Assembly (NCBI GenBank): GCA_033442325.1
Contig: JAWQFM010000004.1
Coordinates: 2,259,805 to 2,323,804, forward strand
DNA: 64,000 bases
Source of the DNA: Salpingoeca rosetta
Lineage: Eukaryota; Protista; Choanoflagellata
Reading direction: 5' to 3'
The position numbers were made by a program, and so were the translations under genes. This document shows, piece by piece, positions 30,105 through 54,168 of the stretch; the first letter of the stretch is position 1, and each line of letters begins with the position of its first letter. Under the pieces are notes generated by a model. It searched no databases and was not told the origin of the DNA. It saw nothing but the letters and a program-made list of their open reading frames with translations.

Positions 30105-33100
30105 CTACTGCCACACTTGGCGGATGCGGTTGTTGCGCGTGTCTGCAAAGACAACGTTGCCCGTGCGTGCAGAGAAGGTGACAGAGGTCGGGAAGTTGAG
30201 GGACGACGCCGTGGCCGCGTTGTCGCCATTGTACCCGTGCTCCCCATCCCCAGTAATCGTCTCAATCACACCCGCAGTCGAGCTGCCAATGTTGAACACC
30301 CGGACGCGGTGGTTGCCCGAGTCTGCAATGGCCAGAGTGCCGGAGGAGTGCACGGCCACGCCATGCGGAACCCTCAATGCTGCGTTTGTGGGCAGCCCAC
30401 CATCACCGCTAAAGCCAGCACTACCGGTGCCGGCAACCGTGGTGATGACCTGCGTACGCATGTCCACGGCGCGGATGCGGTGATTCCCGCTGTCTGCAAT
30501 GTACAGCACGCCCTTGGAGAGGGCAATACCACGTGGTCGGTTCAGGCGCGCCCCAATGCTCAGGCCGTCGTCACCAGAGTACCCAGCAAAGCGTGGCGTG
30601 CCGGCAACAACAGAGATGATTAGGCTGCGCCGGTTCACCATGTACACGACGTGGTTCTCCTCGTCCGAGAACAGCAGGCTGCCATCGTCGGCCCACGCCA
30701 GCCCAACTGGGGAGTGGATGGCAGCGTTGCCAGGCGTGCCGCCCATGCCACGGTGGCCAGGGTTGCCCGTGCCCGCACCCACAATCAGCTTCTTGCTCGC
30801 TACATCGACAATCGACACGCGGTGGTTGCCTTCCTCCGTGATGTACACGTTGCCCTCCACATCGGCAATTGCGCAGCGGGGGCGGTTCAGCTGTGCGCTC
30901 GTCGCAGCGCCGCCAACGCCGCTCGCGCCCATCTCGCCCGTGCCGGCGACCAGGGAGGACGTGCGCGTGCGCAAGTCCACGCGGATGACGCGGTGGTCGG
31001 ACACCATCGTCACCAGCATCTCGTGCTCGCCGTCAAAGGTGACGCACACGGGGCGGTTGAGCCCGGTCGTGGTCGGCGCTCCACCCGCGGACCAGGTGGT
31101 GCTGCCATCGCCAGCGACCGTCTGCACAACGCCTTCGGAGGCTGGCGTTGTTGTGGACACGGCGGGTGGGCGCGTGCCCTTGGTCAGGGACACGGATGGC
31201 TCAGAAGTTGGCTCACCGGTGTCTGTGCCCAAATCACGCATGAGCTGGCATCGGAATGCACCCTCGTCGCTCGGGGCAATGACAACGCCAAGGCACGCCT
31301 GCTCTGCGTCACAGTACCGCAGGCACTGCAGCACAGACTCGGCCTCCATGTTGACAATGATGGCGTAGGCGTCCACGGCTGTGGAGAATTGTCGCGCGTT
31401 GCTCGTGGCACCGTTCACGTTGCCCGTGAATGTCAGCTCGTAGTGGTAGTCCGCAAACGGGAAGTCAAACGCGGCACCAGGGGACGGCTGCCCCGTCACG
31501 CCCCCTGGCGATGTCGTGGACGTAACCCCACCTTCCACACACAGGCACACCTGCACGTGTGTGCGCGAGTGCGTGAGTGAGTGTGTGTGTATGTGTATGT
31601 AGTGTGTGTGTGTGTGTGTGTGTGTGTGTGTGTGTGTGTGTGTGTGTGTGTGTGTGTGTGTGTGTGTGTGTGTGTGTGAGTGAGTGTGTGTGTGAGTGAG
31701 TGTGTGTGTGTGAATTAGAACCAAACAGACGGCATCGAAGCGCGTGTGATCACCTCACGAACACATACACATACATACACATACATACATACACACATAC
31801 ACTCACAATACAAATATGACGCACCTGTCTGCACCCGAGGTGCATCTCTCTGAAGATGCCTTGCAGCTCTTGTGCGTCGCAATGGGCAGTGCATGCCTCT
31901 TCATCGCGCGTCAGACGGAAGCGGCGCCCGCATCCGCAGGCGCACACCTGTTCCACCGTGACAAGAATGTAATGCATCAATGCCATCGTGTGAATGCATG
32001 TGCGTTGGAAGGGGTGATGTGCATCAATCAGTACATAATAGGGTGGGTTGTTTGAGGCCGCTGATGATGAGCCACATATGTGTGCACGTTCACAAATTCA
32101 CGCTTGGCGCGTCTGCGTGTGACATACATGCAGACCACCACTTAAACAGCACGTACAACAAGCAGTGTGCACCTGGCGCAATTCCGCAACAAAACACAAT
32201 TCAACACTCAGCGCACGTTGTTGCAATTGCCGTATTGCTTGGTGAATGTGCCTGCACCCTTGTTGTAGTACTCGCAGCGCGCGTGACACGTGGCTGGGTT
32301 TGCTGCTGTTACATACGCATCGCAGAGGTCCACAACGTTCGGCTCCGGCGTTGTTGTTGTCATGACTGCATATGCGTGTGTGCAGGTGTACACGCGTGGG
32401 CGTGTGTGTGTGTGTGCGTGTATGTGTACATGTGTAGATGAGAGCCAACACAAAAGGAAGGGGGTTCAAATTGTTTTCGAAGGCATGCGCGTGTGTCATG
32501 GAACAATGCAACGTCTTGGCAACGCTGCGCCCTTCGTCCTGCATGTTAGGGTTGCAAGCGGCCGAGCACAAGCGCGCCAAATCAGCACTCACCCTCGCAT
32601 GTTTTCGGTTTTCCAGACCACGTAGGTTTGCCATTCTTTGTCATGGTACACTTGCGCGTATCAGACCCAGAGGCCGACAGCTTATATCCGCTGTCGCACT
32701 GCACATACTCGCACTCGTCACCTGCAGTCATGAAGTGCGTGAGGCACGGGTGACATGGTGTCAGGAAATGCGATGTACGTGCGTGCGTGCGTGCGTGTGT
32801 GTGTGTGTGCGTGTGTATTTGTGTGTGTGTGTGTGTATGAGTGTGAGTGAGTGTGTGTGTGCGCGCGCGCGCAGATGAACAAAACGAGTTGACAACCAAG
32901 ACATGTAGCACCAAGCACGACTCACCAATATGGCCATCGCACTCGCCAGAAACCGTCCCATCATCAAGTGTTAGTGGGCCACAGCCAATGCCTGCACCAA
33001 TACATGAAAGAACAACAACAACAAAAAAACAAACAAAAAAAAAGGTGCACACAAAAGCGTGGGTTAAACGAGAGATGAGGAGGAACGGGAAAGACGAAGT

Positions 33101-51600: not shown

Positions 51601-54168
51601 ACCACCACCACCACAACAACAACAACAACAACAACAACAACAACAACAACAACAACAACTTAAACAACAACAACAACAACAACAACAACAACAACAACAA
51701 CTTAAACAACAACTTAAACAACAACTTAAACAACAACTTAAACAACAACTGCCCCCGCCGGCATTAGCTTGGAGACGATGACCCGTTTGATGTGTTCGAC
51801 GTGGAAGTGTTCAAGCACCCCGACTTCAACACGCTCGTGTTCCACACGGCCTCTGGCCAGTCGTCATGCCCACACGAGGAAAACACGCTTGAGCTTGAAA
51901 AGCCAGGCATCTCCGTGCTCGAAGCGCCATCTGCACCCGTACTGCCTGACGAACCGGCCGTGTTCCGCCTGCTGCTGAGCAATGACGGCGACTACACGAC
52001 GTACATGCAGTTGTACGCCGTCAACGGCCAAAACCAGGACGGCCTGGAGATTAGCGTTGACGGGCGCTCGCTCGTGGCACCCATCGACTACGTTGGCTTT
52101 GCGCCTGGCGCGACGCAGATCACCGTGATTATGAGGCGCGGGCCCAAGGTGTTCAAGTACGACCCGGTAGACCTCTGGTTCTCATCGCTGTGCGAGCAGG
52201 AACGGCTGGCAGACACGGGCTACCTGAGCGACGAGGCCGTGGCCCAGAAGCGCGTGACACTGCAAGTGGAGTTCCTGCAGCCGTGTTCACCGGTACAGCT
52301 GGTCGGCGCCATTGGCGAGGCGGGCACGTTTGTAGTCAACGCTGCGACGGACCAAGCAACTTCGGGCACCACAGACGAGACGAACCTACACCCTGGTGAG
52401 CTGCGCCTGGTGGCATTCAACCCGGACCACTCGAAACGCACGTGGCAGGAGGATGATCGCCTCAAAGGCGTCATTGTTGAGTACAAGCGGCACATTGACG
52501 GCGACACGGCGTGGATGCCTGCCCGCGACAAATCAGGCAACACGCTTGAGATCAGCGGCCAGGCCAACGAGTACGGCTATGTGACGGTGTGGTGGGACGT
52601 GAGCGGGTTGCTGGAGGGAGAGCATGACCTTCGCATCAGGGCGCGCTGCGAAAAGTCCATCAACCAGGTGCCGGATGGCATTGATGAGCAGTACTCGCAG
52701 GTGGCGTTTGGGGTGGTGGACAGGACACCACCGCGCGTGCTGGGCACCCCTGAGCCCGCAGACGGCGAGTACAAGCCTGGTGACATGATTTCGTTTGAGT
52801 TTGATGAGGCCATCCAGTGCTCCAAGCCGTTCCAGTTTGAGGTGCGCATGGAGGTTGACGGCTTGGACCGCGTGTTTGACAACAGCAACATGGTGATTGT
52901 GTGCGAGGGCCGCAAAATCGCCATGTCGCTTCGCCGCGGGTTCACCTGGGACGACGTCAACGCAAAATCTGCACAGCTCGCACTGGGCATGGTCACCGAC
53001 AAGTACGGCAACGCGGTGCAGCAGAACATCATGTTGTTCTTCACCTTTGCCACGCTGTCCCTGCACGACGCCACCGCACACGTGTCCGGCCTGAAGCTGA
53101 AGACGGCGTTTGACCGCGCCTTCTACAACACGTCGTCGCCTCTGTACAAGGCAACGGCAAACAAGGTGCGCAGCGACATTGCGCACGCACTTGGCATCAA
53201 CCCCTCCCGCGTCATGGTGGTTGGCCTGTCGCCCGTGGACAGCATTGAGTTTGACCGCGGCACGCACGTCGACATCAACTTCCTCCCCGCGTCGGCCAAC
53301 ACTTCATTCCCCGCAGGTGCACCGGCTCTCAATGCGCGGCGAAGAGAGACAACGGCAATAGAGCAGACACCTTCAGCACTGGCCACGATGCTTGAGATGG
53401 TGGTTGCTCGCCCTGATGCTGCTGGTCTGGAGGAGAGTAATGTGCTGCTGCAGCTGACGGCTGACTCACGCGTGGACACGGAGCTCACAGCAGCAGCCAT
53501 GTACAACACCACCACCACGCCGTTTTCCGTCACCTTTGAAGGGTCCACGTCCTCCGACACGCCCCACGAGATCAAAGTTCCAGTTTGTAAGTTTGTGGTG
53601 TCATGGGTGTGGGTGCTCTGTGTGTGTGTGTGGGGGGGGGGGTTGCGAGTGTGTGTGTGGTTGCGCGTGTGATGCGTGATTGTGTGTGTGTGGGGGGGGG
53701 GGTTGCGAGTGTTTGTGGGTGGTCTGTAATTGTGTGTGTGCGGTGTGTGAGTTTGTGATATGTGCACAGACACGCGATTGAATGTGGAAATGCTTGTGCA
53801 CGTGTGATTGTTGCGGCTGCCACTCACCCTCTCTGCTTGCCACTACCCCGTGATGTTTCCAACACACACACACACATACCACAGACTTTACTCTGGCGCT
53901 GCTGTTTGTGATCCTGGGCGTGCAGGTTGTCACGTGCCTCCGTGTTGGTGGCGGTACGGGCCGAAGGTCCTACAAGATGCCGGGGTCCTTCCGCGTGTCG
54001 CCGGAGCATCGTCCCATGTCTCATATGAGCGGACTCAGCGCAGCCACCACACTTGAGGAGAGGGGTACACATGTTCATGAGACGGCGGTGGATGTCGACC
54101 CCCACGCCGATCATCCTGGCAGCAGCTTTGAAGAGAATCCACGTTCCCTCGGCACCACAAATGCCTGA
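42634..54168 (+). CDS. Large type I membrane protein: signal peptide, dermatopontin, 6-Cys sushi, cbEGF, FN3 x2, PAN-like, bacterial-type beta-rich core with Ig-like domain, SEA-like, TM, short tail
   Basis: 18 phase-compatible exons, including 42634-42729, 43056-43121, 43300-43432, 43609-43647, 45224-45478, 46655-47093, 47346-48142, 48366-50781, 51097-51320, 51768-53586 and 53885-54168. Canonical DERM triplet NNFDQPLSYNCPSGQGISQIYSYHDNGKEDRRWGFEC / SYHDNGPEDRRWKFRC / SVHDNGPEDRVWQVYQC. EGF DINEC...CVNDAGTFHCDC. TM YFTLALLFVILGVQVVTCL. Confidence 0.85.
51563..51750. repeat. (CAC)n then (AAC)n/TTA compound repeat just upstream of a 3' splice site
   Basis: Directly visible; the acceptor AG is at 51766-51767. 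Confidence 0.93.

What the first reader, a model, noticed from the sequence alone, without database searches (positions are those of the whole stretch)
30105..54168. Head-to-head pair of large dermatopontin-domain genes, one secreted and one membrane-anchored: a candidate adhesion/aggregation system
Seen: two signal-peptide genes start about 630 bp apart in divergent orientation, and both begin with dermatopontin-type D-R-x-(W/F)-x-(F/Y)-x-C repeats. The minus gene has three DERM-like units and ends in an NHL propeller with no TM. The plus gene has one canonical DERM unit and a C-terminal TM. Established: the dermatopontin family, including Limulus amebocyte aggregation factor and sponge/mollusc matrix proteins, consists mostly of small animal ECM or agglutinin proteins. 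Inference: a co-regulated multivalent soluble cross-linker plus a surface anchor in a probably unicellular or colonial holozoan, possibly used in colony adhesion, substrate attachment or prey capture.
Basis: partly seen in the sequence, partly recalled or inferred. Interest (0 to 1): 0.82.

Follow-up and report, generated by a model that had tools for sequence, protein, structure and literature searches.

The report
Paired dermatopontin surface genes, choanoflagellate
Two back-to-back Salpingoeca rosetta genes (PTSG_03008, secreted; PTSG_03009, membrane-anchored) both carry dermatopontin heads and form one of seven such pairs that were always copied together. This pair is made in equal amounts, mainly in substrate-attached cells, so it is probably a two-part attachment or matrix module in a close relative of animals.

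Summary
The window is Salpingoeca rosetta. The minus gene is PTSG_03008: signal peptide, three DERM units, Sushi repeats, C-terminal NHL propeller, no membrane segment. The plus gene is PTSG_03009: signal peptide, one DERM (Pfam E 1e-53), Sushi, EGF_CA, a roughly 1,900-residue beta-sandwich rod, a SEA-like juxtamembrane domain, one TM and a short tail. Their ATGs lie 628 bp apart.

New context:
- The genome holds seven such head-to-head cassettes, and all seven NHL-type genes sit against a rod-type gene.
- The trees of the two partners have identical topology (Mantel 2/5040) and matching dS, with dN/dS 0.17-0.43.
- Published RNA-seq gives near 1:1 FPKM in all eight samples (r = 0.99), highest in attached (thecate) cells and lowest in most colony samples.
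- Microstomoeca roanoka has a full-length transcript of the secreted type.

The assembly gap is not harmless. It most probably hides the middle exon of the second DERM unit.

Direct binding of the two proteins, and their function, remain inferred.

This scan reached the same seven-cassette conclusion before, at paralogous loci of this genome (s1-433382, s1-435936, s1-432420). I found no paper that describes the pairing.

The parts
30105..42005 (-). Gene A = PTSG_03008 (EGD82344, 'NHL repeat protein', annotated 1484 aa): whole CDS span, ATG at 42005, stop at 30105-30107
   Evidence: Public annotation of identical DNA (L052 matches the window with 0 mismatches). Identifier. Exons conserved and colinear in six paralogous loci.
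41694..42005 (-). A exon 1: signal peptide (hydrophobic [19 protein letters not shown]) and first third of DERM unit 1 (motif DRSFNFHC). The 3' end is approximate.
   Evidence: Pfam DERM profile 4-71, E 3.9e-13; hydrophobicity scan.
41265..41448 (-). A: DERM unit 1, middle part (DRLFRFRC)
   Evidence: Pfam DERM profile 73-130, E 3.1e-12.
40328..40579 (-). A: DERM unit 2, first part (DRVWSYAC)
   Evidence: Pfam DERM profile 1-72, E 1e-13.
39933..40118 (.). Assembly gap (N). It most probably hides the middle exon of DERM unit 2 (profile about 73-124). Its flanks are (CA)n and trinucleotide-repeat intron.
   Evidence: The paralogue on C1 has this exon about 195 bp downstream of the first DERM2 exon.
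39423..39530 (-). A: DERM unit 2, last part ([19 protein letters not shown]). Exon ends approximate.
   Evidence: Pfam DERM profile 125-151, E 1.7e-5, 25.5 bits, below the cut-off on its own.
35078..38934 (-). A: run of two-exon Sushi/CCP-like units (about six)
   Evidence: Pfam Sushi at 38474-38803 (36.1 bits, over the cut-off); weaker at 37868-38110 and 37232-37495. InterPro Sushi/CCP in the Fairclough 2013 annotation. Conserved in paralogues.
33903..34764 (-). A: DERM unit 3 ([17 protein letters not shown])
   Evidence: Pfam DERM profile 28-72 (28.4 bits) and 82-131 (45.2 bits).
30105..31550 (-). A last exon: Cys-containing module, Thr/Pro-rich linker and NHL beta-propeller. The protein ends ...NNRIRQVWQ with no hydrophobic tail.
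   Evidence: Pfam NHL 95.3 bits in 4 stretches, TEN_NHL 62 bits. 45-68% identical copies at exactly six other loci. 51% identical to the M. roanoka orthologue.
42006..42633 (.). Shared 628-bp region between the two ATGs: 5' UTRs plus the presumed bidirectional promoter
   Evidence: Transcription start sites were not mapped.
42634..54168 (+). Gene B = PTSG_03009 (P0177, 2354 aa), 18 exons
   Evidence: Exact mapping of the public protein onto the window.
42634..42729 (+). B exon 1: signal peptide MTVPQPAAIALVLLAMLVAPPPVHA and the start of DERM
43056..44437 (+). B: DERM domain (residues 30-179), spread over six small exons
   Evidence: Pfam DERM E 1.1e-53, profile 1-152, on the spliced protein; exon-level matches.
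44700..45477 (+). B: Sushi-like module and calcium-binding EGF (residues about 180-301)
   Evidence: EGF_CA E 3.9e-7. Sushi scores 16.9 bits, below the cut-off, in paralogue P0180.
48366..50783 (+). B: single 806-codon exon encoding a rod of beta-sandwich domains, then a helical part
   Evidence: AlphaFold2 model, pLDDT 81.9. Foldseek matches adhesin stalks, pilins, mastigoneme and MG domains. 14 paralogues in the genome.
51768..53585 (+). B: further Ig-like beta-sandwich domains and a juxtamembrane beta-alpha-beta (SEA-like / membrane-adjacent-domain-like) module
   Evidence: Model pLDDT 75.3. Foldseek hits include PCDH15 EC9-MAD12 and CDH23 EC25-MAD28. Invariant Arg in the 'SRV' motif.
53887..54168 (+). 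B last exon: TM helix FTLALLFVILGVQVVTCL, stop-transfer RVGGGTGRR, cytoplasmic tail of about 75 aa with SFEENP and C-terminal TTNA, then the stop codon

Best explanation
**What is there (shown).** PTSG_03008 (A) and PTSG_03009 (B) are one of seven paralogous head-to-head cassettes in Salpingoeca rosetta.
- B is a type I membrane protein. It holds one DERM-Sushi-EGF head on a rod of roughly 1,900 residues made of beta-sandwich domains, followed by a SEA-like juxtamembrane domain, one TM helix and a short tail that ends in a PDZ-ligand-like S/T-x-V/A.
- A is a secreted protein with three DERM units, about seven Sushi repeats and a C-terminal NHL propeller.
- The two ATGs are 628 bp apart and the genes yield equal transcript levels.
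- Expression is highest in substrate-attached thecate cells.

**How it most likely works (inferred).** The two products act together outside the cell as a two-part attachment or matrix module. B anchors the system to the membrane, and through its tail to cortical scaffolds. A is a multivalent soluble partner that either docks on B or bridges B-bearing membrane to the theca or substrate matrix through its DERM (agglutinin-type) and NHL domains. Different cassettes are deployed in different cell states.

**My odds:**
- Co-regulated functional unit: about 0.75.
- Role in attachment or the theca matrix: about 0.5.
- Direct A-B binding: about 0.4.
For: **Domains and topology:**

**Single-gene status of A:** public annotation; colinear paralogues; a complete M. 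roanoka transcript with 3xDERM, Sushi and NHL.

**Seven cassettes:**
- DERM matches lie on both strands at 8 loci, and every one is head-to-head.
- The A-type NHL exon occurs exactly 7 times, each time opposite a B-type gene.
- Annotated spacings at four pairs are 448-1291 bp.

**Co-duplication:**
- The A and B trees have the same topology, ((C12,(C23,C19)),(WIN,(C24,(C1,C4)))), with strong support.
- Distance matrices correlate at r = 0.94, exact Mantel 2/5040, and dS is similar for A and B in each comparison.
- Both genes are under purifying selection, dN/dS 0.17-0.43.

**Co-expression (Fairclough 2013, PMC4054682, Additional file 11):**
- FPKM for 03008 / 03009: 29.2/28.4, 25.1/27.9, 36.8/41.0 in attached cells; 15.0/17.2 in swimmers; 2.3/2.0, 6.5/4.2, 16.9/17.0 in rosettes; 2.9/2.5 in chains.
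- r = 0.99, higher than the correlation of either gene with any other family member for which I have values.
- The 07443/07442 pair is also co-expressed (r = 0.96-0.99).

**Adhesin-like build of B:**

**Lectin link:** the M. roanoka orthologue of A adds two SUEL lectin domains.
Against: - No direct evidence that A binds B. The one complex prediction gave no answer.
Transcription start sites and a shared promoter are therefore inferred from spacing and co-expression.
- No shared promoter motif was found among the cassettes.
- Seven further B-type genes exist without an A partner, so B can evidently work alone.
- About 1,410 genes are up in thecate cells, so thecate expression alone is weak evidence for a theca role.
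- One cassette (11058/11057) shows poorly matched profiles (r about 0.25), perhaps through multi-mapping with its 97%-identical twin.
- The rosette sample CoAB shows moderate expression (17 FPKM).
Confidence: 0.55

Rival explanations
1. **Co-regulated but functionally independent paralogues.** The pair arose by inverted duplication of a DERM-Sushi 5' part. Later segmental duplications simply carried both genes along. A and B act in parallel on different targets, with no physical or obligatory functional coupling.
For: - The heads are homologous: the first DERM of the M. roanoka A-type protein is most like B's DERM.
- A second, homotypic head-to-head DERM-collagen pair exists on C22, so inverted duplication is common in this family.
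- Seven B-type genes lack a partner.
- No interaction evidence exists.
Against: - A is never found without B across at least six duplications. These include old ones (dS about 0.7-1.3), long enough for single-gene loss or rearrangement.
- Trees and distances are strictly mirrored.
- Transcript levels are near 1:1 across eight samples.
Confidence: 0.2
2. **Pair-specific recognition system.** Each cassette would encode a matched ligand (A) and receptor (B) used for self/non-self, mating or cell-cell recognition. This would resemble the head-to-head tgrB1/tgrC1 pairs of Dictyostelium (comparison from my own knowledge).
For: - Several diverged cassettes exist with mirrored evolution.
- The DERM head is among the more diverged ectodomain parts of B: 41-58% identity against 53-73% for the rod.
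- Cassettes differ in expression state: for example 07192 is up in swimmers and colonies, while 03008/03009 are up in attached cells.
Against: - A has no membrane anchor.
- dN/dS is well below 1 on the parts tested.
- Expression of this cassette is lowest in most colony samples.
- Rosettes form clonally by incomplete division (Fairclough 2013), so kin recognition is not obviously needed.
- Polymorphism between isolates was not tested.
Confidence: 0.1
3. **Bacterial prey capture or defence lectins.** The DERM heads (Limulus agglutinin-type) and the NHL propeller would bind bacterial surface glycans. B would be the surface receptor and A a soluble agglutinin or opsonin.
For: - The DERM family includes the Limulus hemagglutinin/aggregation factor, a name that sources also give to S. 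rosetta paralogues.
- The M. roanoka A-type protein carries two SUEL galactose/rhamnose lectin domains.
- Samples differ in bacterial prey, and expression varies among them.
Against: - All cell types feed on bacteria, yet expression differs about tenfold between attached cells and most colony samples.
- No glycan-binding data exist.
Confidence: 0.1
4. **Artefact.** The minus-strand model would be several unrelated genes fused by annotation across the assembly gap, or bacterial contamination or horizontal-transfer debris.
For: - The gap lies inside the gene.
- Matriano 2021 lists PTSG_03008 as 'foreign' by alien index, because its NHL part resembles Bacteroidetes proteins.
Against: - The same exon order occurs in six paralogous loci without gaps at that place.
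- One complete M. roanoka transcript spans DERM to NHL.
- The gene has many GT-AG introns.
- The gene's read counts and FPKM values track those of its neighbour across all eight samples.
Confidence: 0.02

Closest known systems
Dermatopontin / DERM family (Pfam PF14704): vertebrate dermatopontin, Limulus hemagglutinin/amebocyte aggregation factor, mollusc shell-matrix dermatopontins
   Same: Both genes contain bona fide DERM domains with the repeated D-R-x-W/F-x-F/Y-x-C motifs. The products are extracellular. An adhesion, agglutination or matrix role is plausible.
   Different: The classical members are small single-domain secreted proteins. Here DERM is the head of a 2354-aa membrane protein, and is used three times in a protein of about 1500 aa with Sushi repeats and an NHL propeller. 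The genes come as co-duplicated head-to-head pairs in a unicellular or colonial relative of animals.
S. rosetta 'DPT/Ca2+ EGF' genes reported by Matriano et al. 2021 (PMC7971027)
   Same: It is the same gene family. That paper lists 10 dermatopontin/EGF genes, present in craspedids but not in some loricates, and suggests a role in theca production. PTSG_03008 and PTSG_12719 appear in its tables.
   Different: The passages and tables I read present them as candidate horizontal transfers. I saw no mention there of the head-to-head pairing with NHL-type partners, the seven cassettes, their co-phylogeny or their 1:1 co-expression.
Bidirectional (head-to-head) gene pairs with a shared promoter
   Same: Divergent orientation, less than 1 kb between the coding starts, and tightly correlated expression.
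   Different: Most described pairs are unrelated housekeeping genes. Here the partners share a homologous head and a secretory fate, and the pair has been multiplied as a unit.
Dictyostelium tgrB1/tgrC1 adhesion and allorecognition pairs (from my own knowledge, not tested here)
   Same: A multicopy family of head-to-head, co-expressed genes for extracellular adhesion-type proteins in a facultatively multicellular protist.
   Different: Both Tgr partners are membrane proteins with Ig-like folds and are highly polymorphic. Here one partner is secreted, the domains are DERM, Sushi and NHL, polymorphism is unknown, and expression peaks in solitary attached cells.
Giant stalked adhesins and adhesion receptors (bacterial RTX/CnaB-type adhesin stalks; cadherin-23 and protocadherin-15 with a membrane-adjacent domain)
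   Same: The B ectodomain is predicted to be a long chain of beta-sandwich domains ending in a SEA-like / membrane-adjacent-domain-like module next to the membrane.
   Different: There is no sequence-level family membership (no Pfam or PDB sequence hit). TM-scores are low, so the similarity is one of architecture only.

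Membership tests
Dermatopontin domain (Pfam PF14704, DERM) | HMM match above the curated cut-off (28.3 bits) | tested here: met
   B spliced protein scores 182 bits over profile 1-152. A exon pieces score 50.3, 47.4, 52.2, 45.2 and 28.4 bits.
Dermatopontin domain (Pfam PF14704, DERM) | Three D-R-x-(W/F)-x-(F/Y)-x-C type repeats per domain | tested here: met
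   B has DRRWGFEC, DRRWKFRC and DRVWQVYQC. A unit 1 has [16 protein letters not shown] and DRIYKFITC. Unit 2 has DRVWSYAC and DRVWAVTAC, with its middle repeat presumably in the gap. Unit 3 has [17 protein letters not shown] and SRSFIFRTC.
Classical dermatopontin proteins (small secreted ECM proteins or agglutinins) | Single-domain secreted protein of about 20 kDa | tested here: not met
   Both are large multidomain proteins, of 2354 aa and about 1484 aa or more.
Classical dermatopontin proteins (small secreted ECM proteins or agglutinins) | Binds collagen, decorin or cells; agglutinates cells | not testable with these tools
   Needs recombinant protein assays.
NHL-repeat beta-propeller (PF01436 / PF25021) | Several NHL repeats above the cut-off that form a propeller | tested here: met
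   NHL scores 95.3 bits in 4 stretches and TEN_NHL 62.1 bits in the last exon of A. The structure of this part was not predicted.
Sushi/CCP (PF00084) | HMM match above the cut-off (20.7 bits) | tested here: met
   One A exon scores 36.1 bits. Others score 18.9 and 14.0 bits, below the cut-off, because each unit is split over two exons. InterPro Sushi is listed for both genes in the Fairclough 2013 annotation.
Bidirectional promoter gene pair | Divergent orientation with start sites less than 1 kb apart | tested here: inconclusive
   The ATGs are 628 bp apart. Transcription start sites could not be mapped.
Bidirectional promoter gene pair | Correlated expression of the two genes | tested here: met
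   r = 0.99 and an A/B FPKM ratio of 0.88-1.52 over eight published samples.
Tgr-like allorecognition pair | Both partners membrane-anchored; highly polymorphic between strains | tested here: not met
   A has no TM or hydrophobic C-terminus. Polymorphism was not tested.
Type I membrane receptor (B) | N-terminal signal peptide, a single C-terminal TM helix, positive-inside flank | tested here: met
   The hydrophobicity scan finds only residues 1-19 and 2258-2276. RVGGGTGRR follows the TM. No dedicated predictor was available.

The most novel reading that the evidence does not exclude
The seven cassettes would form a pre-animal 'matched-pair' adhesion code. Each secreted A protein would bind only the DERM-Sushi head of the B protein encoded next to it. 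Cell-state-specific choice of cassette (attached cells against swimmers and colonies) would then decide which matrix or partner a cell sticks to. That would be a heterophilic ligand-receptor family whose specificity is kept together by head-to-head linkage.
Probability: 0.15. Interest if true: 0.8.

Novelty: new variant of a known kind. Interest (0 to 1): 0.6.

Why it matters
[quoted passage not shown] Dermatopontin, Sushi, EGF and NHL domains are building blocks of animal matrix and adhesion proteins. Here they are organised as a two-gene unit that selection has kept together through at least six duplications and that is expressed at 1:1.

This yields a concrete, testable candidate for how a pre-animal cell builds and holds on to its extracellular structure, the theca or the substrate attachment. 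It also offers a natural case of genetic linkage preserving a secreted/anchored protein pair.

If the pairs prove to be cognate binders, they would be an early example of a diversified ligand-receptor adhesion family outside animals.

In practical terms, the result flags that the public model of PTSG_03008 is probably missing an exon in an assembly gap.

Tried and rejected
**RNA reads.** Run selection worked, but nothing could be laid.
- The first stretch held a long repeat at 39596-39704.
- There is therefore no read-level evidence for splice junctions, start sites or the gap.
- No letters of 41627-41682 were sent to any search tool afterwards. Local scripts in the closed sandbox read the window file as a whole.

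**Complex prediction** (B residues 26-520 with the last exon of A): 'no answer'. It is not evidence either way.

**Shared promoter motif** among cassette intergenic regions: only CA/AAC-rich low-complexity words were shared.

**Searches for the B rod that found nothing:**
- Sequence search of solved structures: nothing significant.
- ESM Atlas look-up of B residues 1655-2260: no usable hit.

**My splice-aware model of gene A**.
- The first run overfitted micro-exons.
- The constrained run is approximate: 25 exons, with some retained-intron errors and one DERM2 exon missed.
- I therefore give feature coordinates, not a full exon table.

**Further genomic DNA.** That subfamily is represented in the tree by public proteins instead.

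**Public protein of gene A.** The length window of the word search prevented retrieval of PTSG_03008. Its identity rests on the annotation table and supplementary tables.

**Earlier reading withdrawn.** My first reading that the gap is purely intronic was withdrawn.

**Contamination or horizontal-transfer debris** was considered and rejected; see the rival explanations.

Full report
**1. What the window is.**
The region is intron-rich eukaryotic DNA with (CA)n-rich introns. Searching the plus gene's 806-codon exon against 1.8 billion representative proteins, followed by cluster look-ups, led to Salpingoeca rosetta proteins. The public protein PTSG_03009 (P0177) maps exactly onto 18 exons at 42634-54168. 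The Broad assembly locus L052 (GL832960.1) is identical to the window, including the same run of N.

The public annotation calls the minus strand as one gene with a 1484-aa product (DERM, Sushi, DERM, TEN_NHL, NHL), 629 bp from PTSG_03009. Supplementary tables identify it as PTSG_03008 / EGD82344, 'NHL repeat protein'.

**2. Check of the observation.**
The Pfam DERM model matches both strands well above its cut-off.

| Gene | Feature | Window places | Profile positions / score |
|---|---|---|---|
| A (minus) | DERM unit 1 | 41691-42320; 41101-41454 | 4-71 (50 bits); 73-130 (47 bits) |
| A | DERM unit 2 | 40124-40826; 39309-39530 | 1-72 (52 bits); 125-151 (25.5 bits) |
| A | DERM unit 3 | 34240-34491; 33463-34236 | 28-72; 82-131 (45 bits) |
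| A | Sushi | 38474-38803 | 36 bits |
| A | NHL propeller | 30108-31754 | 95 bits |
| B (plus) | DERM | residues 30-179 of P0177 | E 1.1e-53, 182 bits |
| B | EGF_CA | residues 260-300 | E 3.9e-7 |

A hydrophobicity scan finds only a signal segment in the conserved coding blocks of A. In B it finds only the signal segment plus one C-terminal TM (residues 2258-2276, followed by RVGGGTGRR).

**3. The gap.**
Both flanks of 39933-40118 are simple repeats, so the letters on the two sides are not one reading frame. DERM unit 2 has its first part (profile 1-72) above the gap and its last part (profile 125-151) below it. The middle part is nowhere in the assembled letters.

The close paralogue on contig C1 carries that middle part as a separate exon about 195 bp after the first DERM2 exon. 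That is exactly where the gap lies here. The gap therefore most probably hides one exon of about 180 bp, and the public 1484-aa model is probably short by about 60 residues. Gene continuity itself is not in doubt. The exon order is the same in six paralogous loci and in a complete transcript ORF of Microstomoeca roanoka.

**4. The pair is one of seven.**
A six-frame DERM search of the whole genome gives 89 exon-level matches at about 22 loci. At eight loci the matches lie on both strands, always head-to-head.

- Exons of both window genes have paralogues at six other loci. In each, a B-type gene and an A-type gene face away from each other.
- Genome-wide, the B rod exon has 14 copies: seven paired, and seven in an unpaired subfamily with an extra intron.
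- The A-type NHL exon has exactly seven copies, every one opposite a paired B.
- The public annotation shows the same layout at PTSG_07192, PTSG_11057 and PTSG_07442. Their partners have 1448-1455 aa and the spacings are 448-1291 bp.

**5. Co-duplication.**
Maximum-likelihood trees of the A NHL exon and the B rod exon have the same topology, ((C12,(C23,C19)),(WIN,(C24,(C1,C4)))), with starred support at nearly all nodes. The paired B genes separate from the unpaired S. rosetta subfamily at 99/100 support, and a Barroeca monosierra protein groups with the unpaired set.

- Pairwise dN matrices of A and B correlate at r = 0.94, and only 2 of 5040 permutations reach that value.
- dS is similar for A and B in each comparison. 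For example, WIN-C24 gives 0.89 against 0.87, and WIN-C12 gives 1.28 against 1.17.
- dN/dS is 0.17-0.43.

The unit has thus been copied as a whole at least six times, without partner swapping or loss of A. Both genes are under purifying selection.

**6. Co-expression.**
The header of Additional file 11 of Fairclough et al. 2013 (PMC4054682) shows three attached (thecate) samples, one swimmer sample, three rosette samples and one chain sample. The listed fold changes compare attached cells with the others, although the caption held for the file says 'colonial'.

| Sample type | PTSG_03008 FPKM | PTSG_03009 FPKM |
|---|---|---|
| Attached | 29.2, 25.1, 36.8 | 28.4, 27.9, 41.0 |
| Swimmer | 15.0 | 17.2 |
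| Rosette | 2.3, 6.5, 16.9 | 2.0, 4.2, 17.0 |
| Chain | 2.9 | 2.5 |

They give r = 0.99 with an A/B ratio of 0.88-1.52.

- The 07443/07442 cassette is also tightly correlated, but with a different profile.
- PTSG_07192 is instead high in swimmers and colonies.
- The 11058/11057 pair is poorly matched. This may reflect read multi-mapping with its 97%-identical twin.
- About 1,410 genes are up in thecate cells. The cell-type bias is therefore unremarkable by itself, and the near-equal dosage is the informative part.

**7. What the proteins look like.**
The B rod (residues 775-1580) folds with pLDDT 81.9 as a chain of beta-sandwich domains followed by long helices. Foldseek finds adhesin stalks, Gram-positive pilins, the Chlamydomonas mastigoneme and macroglobulin MG domains, all at low TM-score.

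Residues 1581-2262 are further Ig-like domains and a juxtamembrane beta-alpha-beta module. The hits include the membrane-adjacent domains of protocadherin-15 and cadherin-23. No Pfam model or solved-structure sequence matches these roughly 1,900 residues significantly.

The tails of the B paralogues share an SFEENP motif and end in S/T-x-V/A. Among paired B genes the DERM head is among the more diverged ectodomain parts (41-58% identity against 53-73% for the rod).

The M. roanoka protein P0183 (1729 aa) has 3xDERM, 2xSUEL lectin, Sushi and a C-terminal NHL. Its first DERM is most similar to B's DERM in this window. This fits an origin of the pair by inverted duplication of a DERM-Sushi 5' part.

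**8. Interpretation.**

*Shown:*
- two real DERM genes, one predicted secreted and one predicted membrane-anchored;
- divergent orientation with a short spacer;
- co-duplication as a unit;
- equal, co-varying transcript levels that peak in attached cells.

*Inferred:*
- a shared bidirectional promoter;
- joint action at the cell surface, with B as a tall anchor and A as a multivalent soluble partner or cross-linker;
- a role in theca or substrate attachment.

Matriano et al. 2021 had already noted dermatopontin/EGF genes in S. rosetta, treated them as horizontal-transfer candidates and suggested a theca role. The passages I read do not mention the pairing, and text searches found no paper that names these genes or describes it.

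Rivals are parallel but independent functions, a pair-specific recognition code, and bacterial binding. None is excluded.

**9. Relation to earlier work of this scan.**
After I had reached these conclusions, a word search showed that follow-up agents had described the same seven-cassette story at three paralogous loci (s1-433382, s1-435936, s1-432420). It also listed notes on dermatopontin-collagen fibre genes (s1-442041, a first-reader note; s1-433345, with a follow-up), which may concern the pair I saw on C22. My results agree with them.

For this locus my work adds:
- the gap diagnosis;
- the gene identifiers and expression values;
- the M. roanoka orthologue;
- the tail motifs;
- the fold of the rod.

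**10. Limits.**
No RNA reads could be laid. The exon table of A is approximate. Signal peptide and TM calls rest on hydrophobicity only.

Noticed in passing
G000:C22:487001-507000 (L041 and L042; minus gene starts near 496172, plus-gene DERM at 499066): An eighth head-to-head DERM pair of another kind. Both partners are DERM plus collagen (GPQ) repeats plus one huge open frame (1658 and 1472 aa). This is a homotypic inverted pair. Earlier notes s1-442041 and s1-433345 on dermatopontin-tipped collagen genes may concern the same or related genes.
   Followed up: partly
window 53887-54165 (+) and the C-termini of P0178, P0179, P0180, P0001, P0168, P0169: The cytoplasmic tails of B-type proteins share an SFEENP-like motif. 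They end in S/T-x-V/A (TTNA, LSHV, LSQV, MSHV, ESNA, ETTV), which looks like a PDZ-domain ligand and suggests a link to cortical scaffolds.
   Followed up: partly
G000: C35:61k, C19:1227k, C14:821k, C12:1204k, C7:333k, C12:19k, C6:467k: A second subfamily of seven B-type genes (for example PTSG_07019, 12565, 11664, 10665) has an extra intron at about residue 597 of the rod exon and DERM matches on one strand only. At PTSG_07019, the only one whose surroundings I inspected, there is no A-type partner. A Barroeca monosierra protein groups with this subfamily.
   Followed up: partly
G000:C19:927387-929378 (-) (PTSG_07442, P0181): This paired B copy has an in-frame TGA in the rod exon, and its public model is shortened (1938 aa, no TM). 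It may be a young pseudogene or an assembly error. Its twin on C23 is 97% identical and intact.
   Followed up: no
P0014 (M. brevicollis), P0005, P0008 (S. infusionum), P0165/P0003 (Barroeca), P0040/P0182 (diatom Seminavis), P0006 (Paulinella): The rod module occurs behind quite different N-terminal heads: F5/8 type C, PQQ/WD40-like propellers, a head whose source name is 'ribosomal oxygenase 2', and heads named 'cupin superfamily'. The search gave 350 hits at E <= 0.001. It appears to be a portable stalk for exchangeable heads across protists. First-stage note s1-440512 compared it with Bacteroidetes secreted proteins, and one bacterial T9SS-type protein (P0175) does match 20% of PTSG_07019, an unpaired paralogue of the plus gene, at 26% identity.
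   Followed up: partly
Genome-wide DERM matches and window 40328, 41454/41691, 43431: Exon-level DERM matches break again and again at profile position about 71-73. This points to an intron position conserved across the whole S. rosetta DERM family, including both window genes.
   Followed up: no
Fairclough 2013 Additional files 11 and 12 (PMC4054682): As held in the library, the captions of the supplementary files do not fit their contents. File S11, captioned 'colonial', has a header that compares attached cells with colonies and swimmers.
   Followed up: partly
PTSG_11058 / PTSG_11057 (G000:C23:1158-1178k): In this cassette the secreted partner keeps being expressed in swimmers and colonies while the anchored one drops (r about 0.25). 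This is either real uncoupling or read mis-assignment between the 97%-identical C19 and C23 copies.
   Followed up: no
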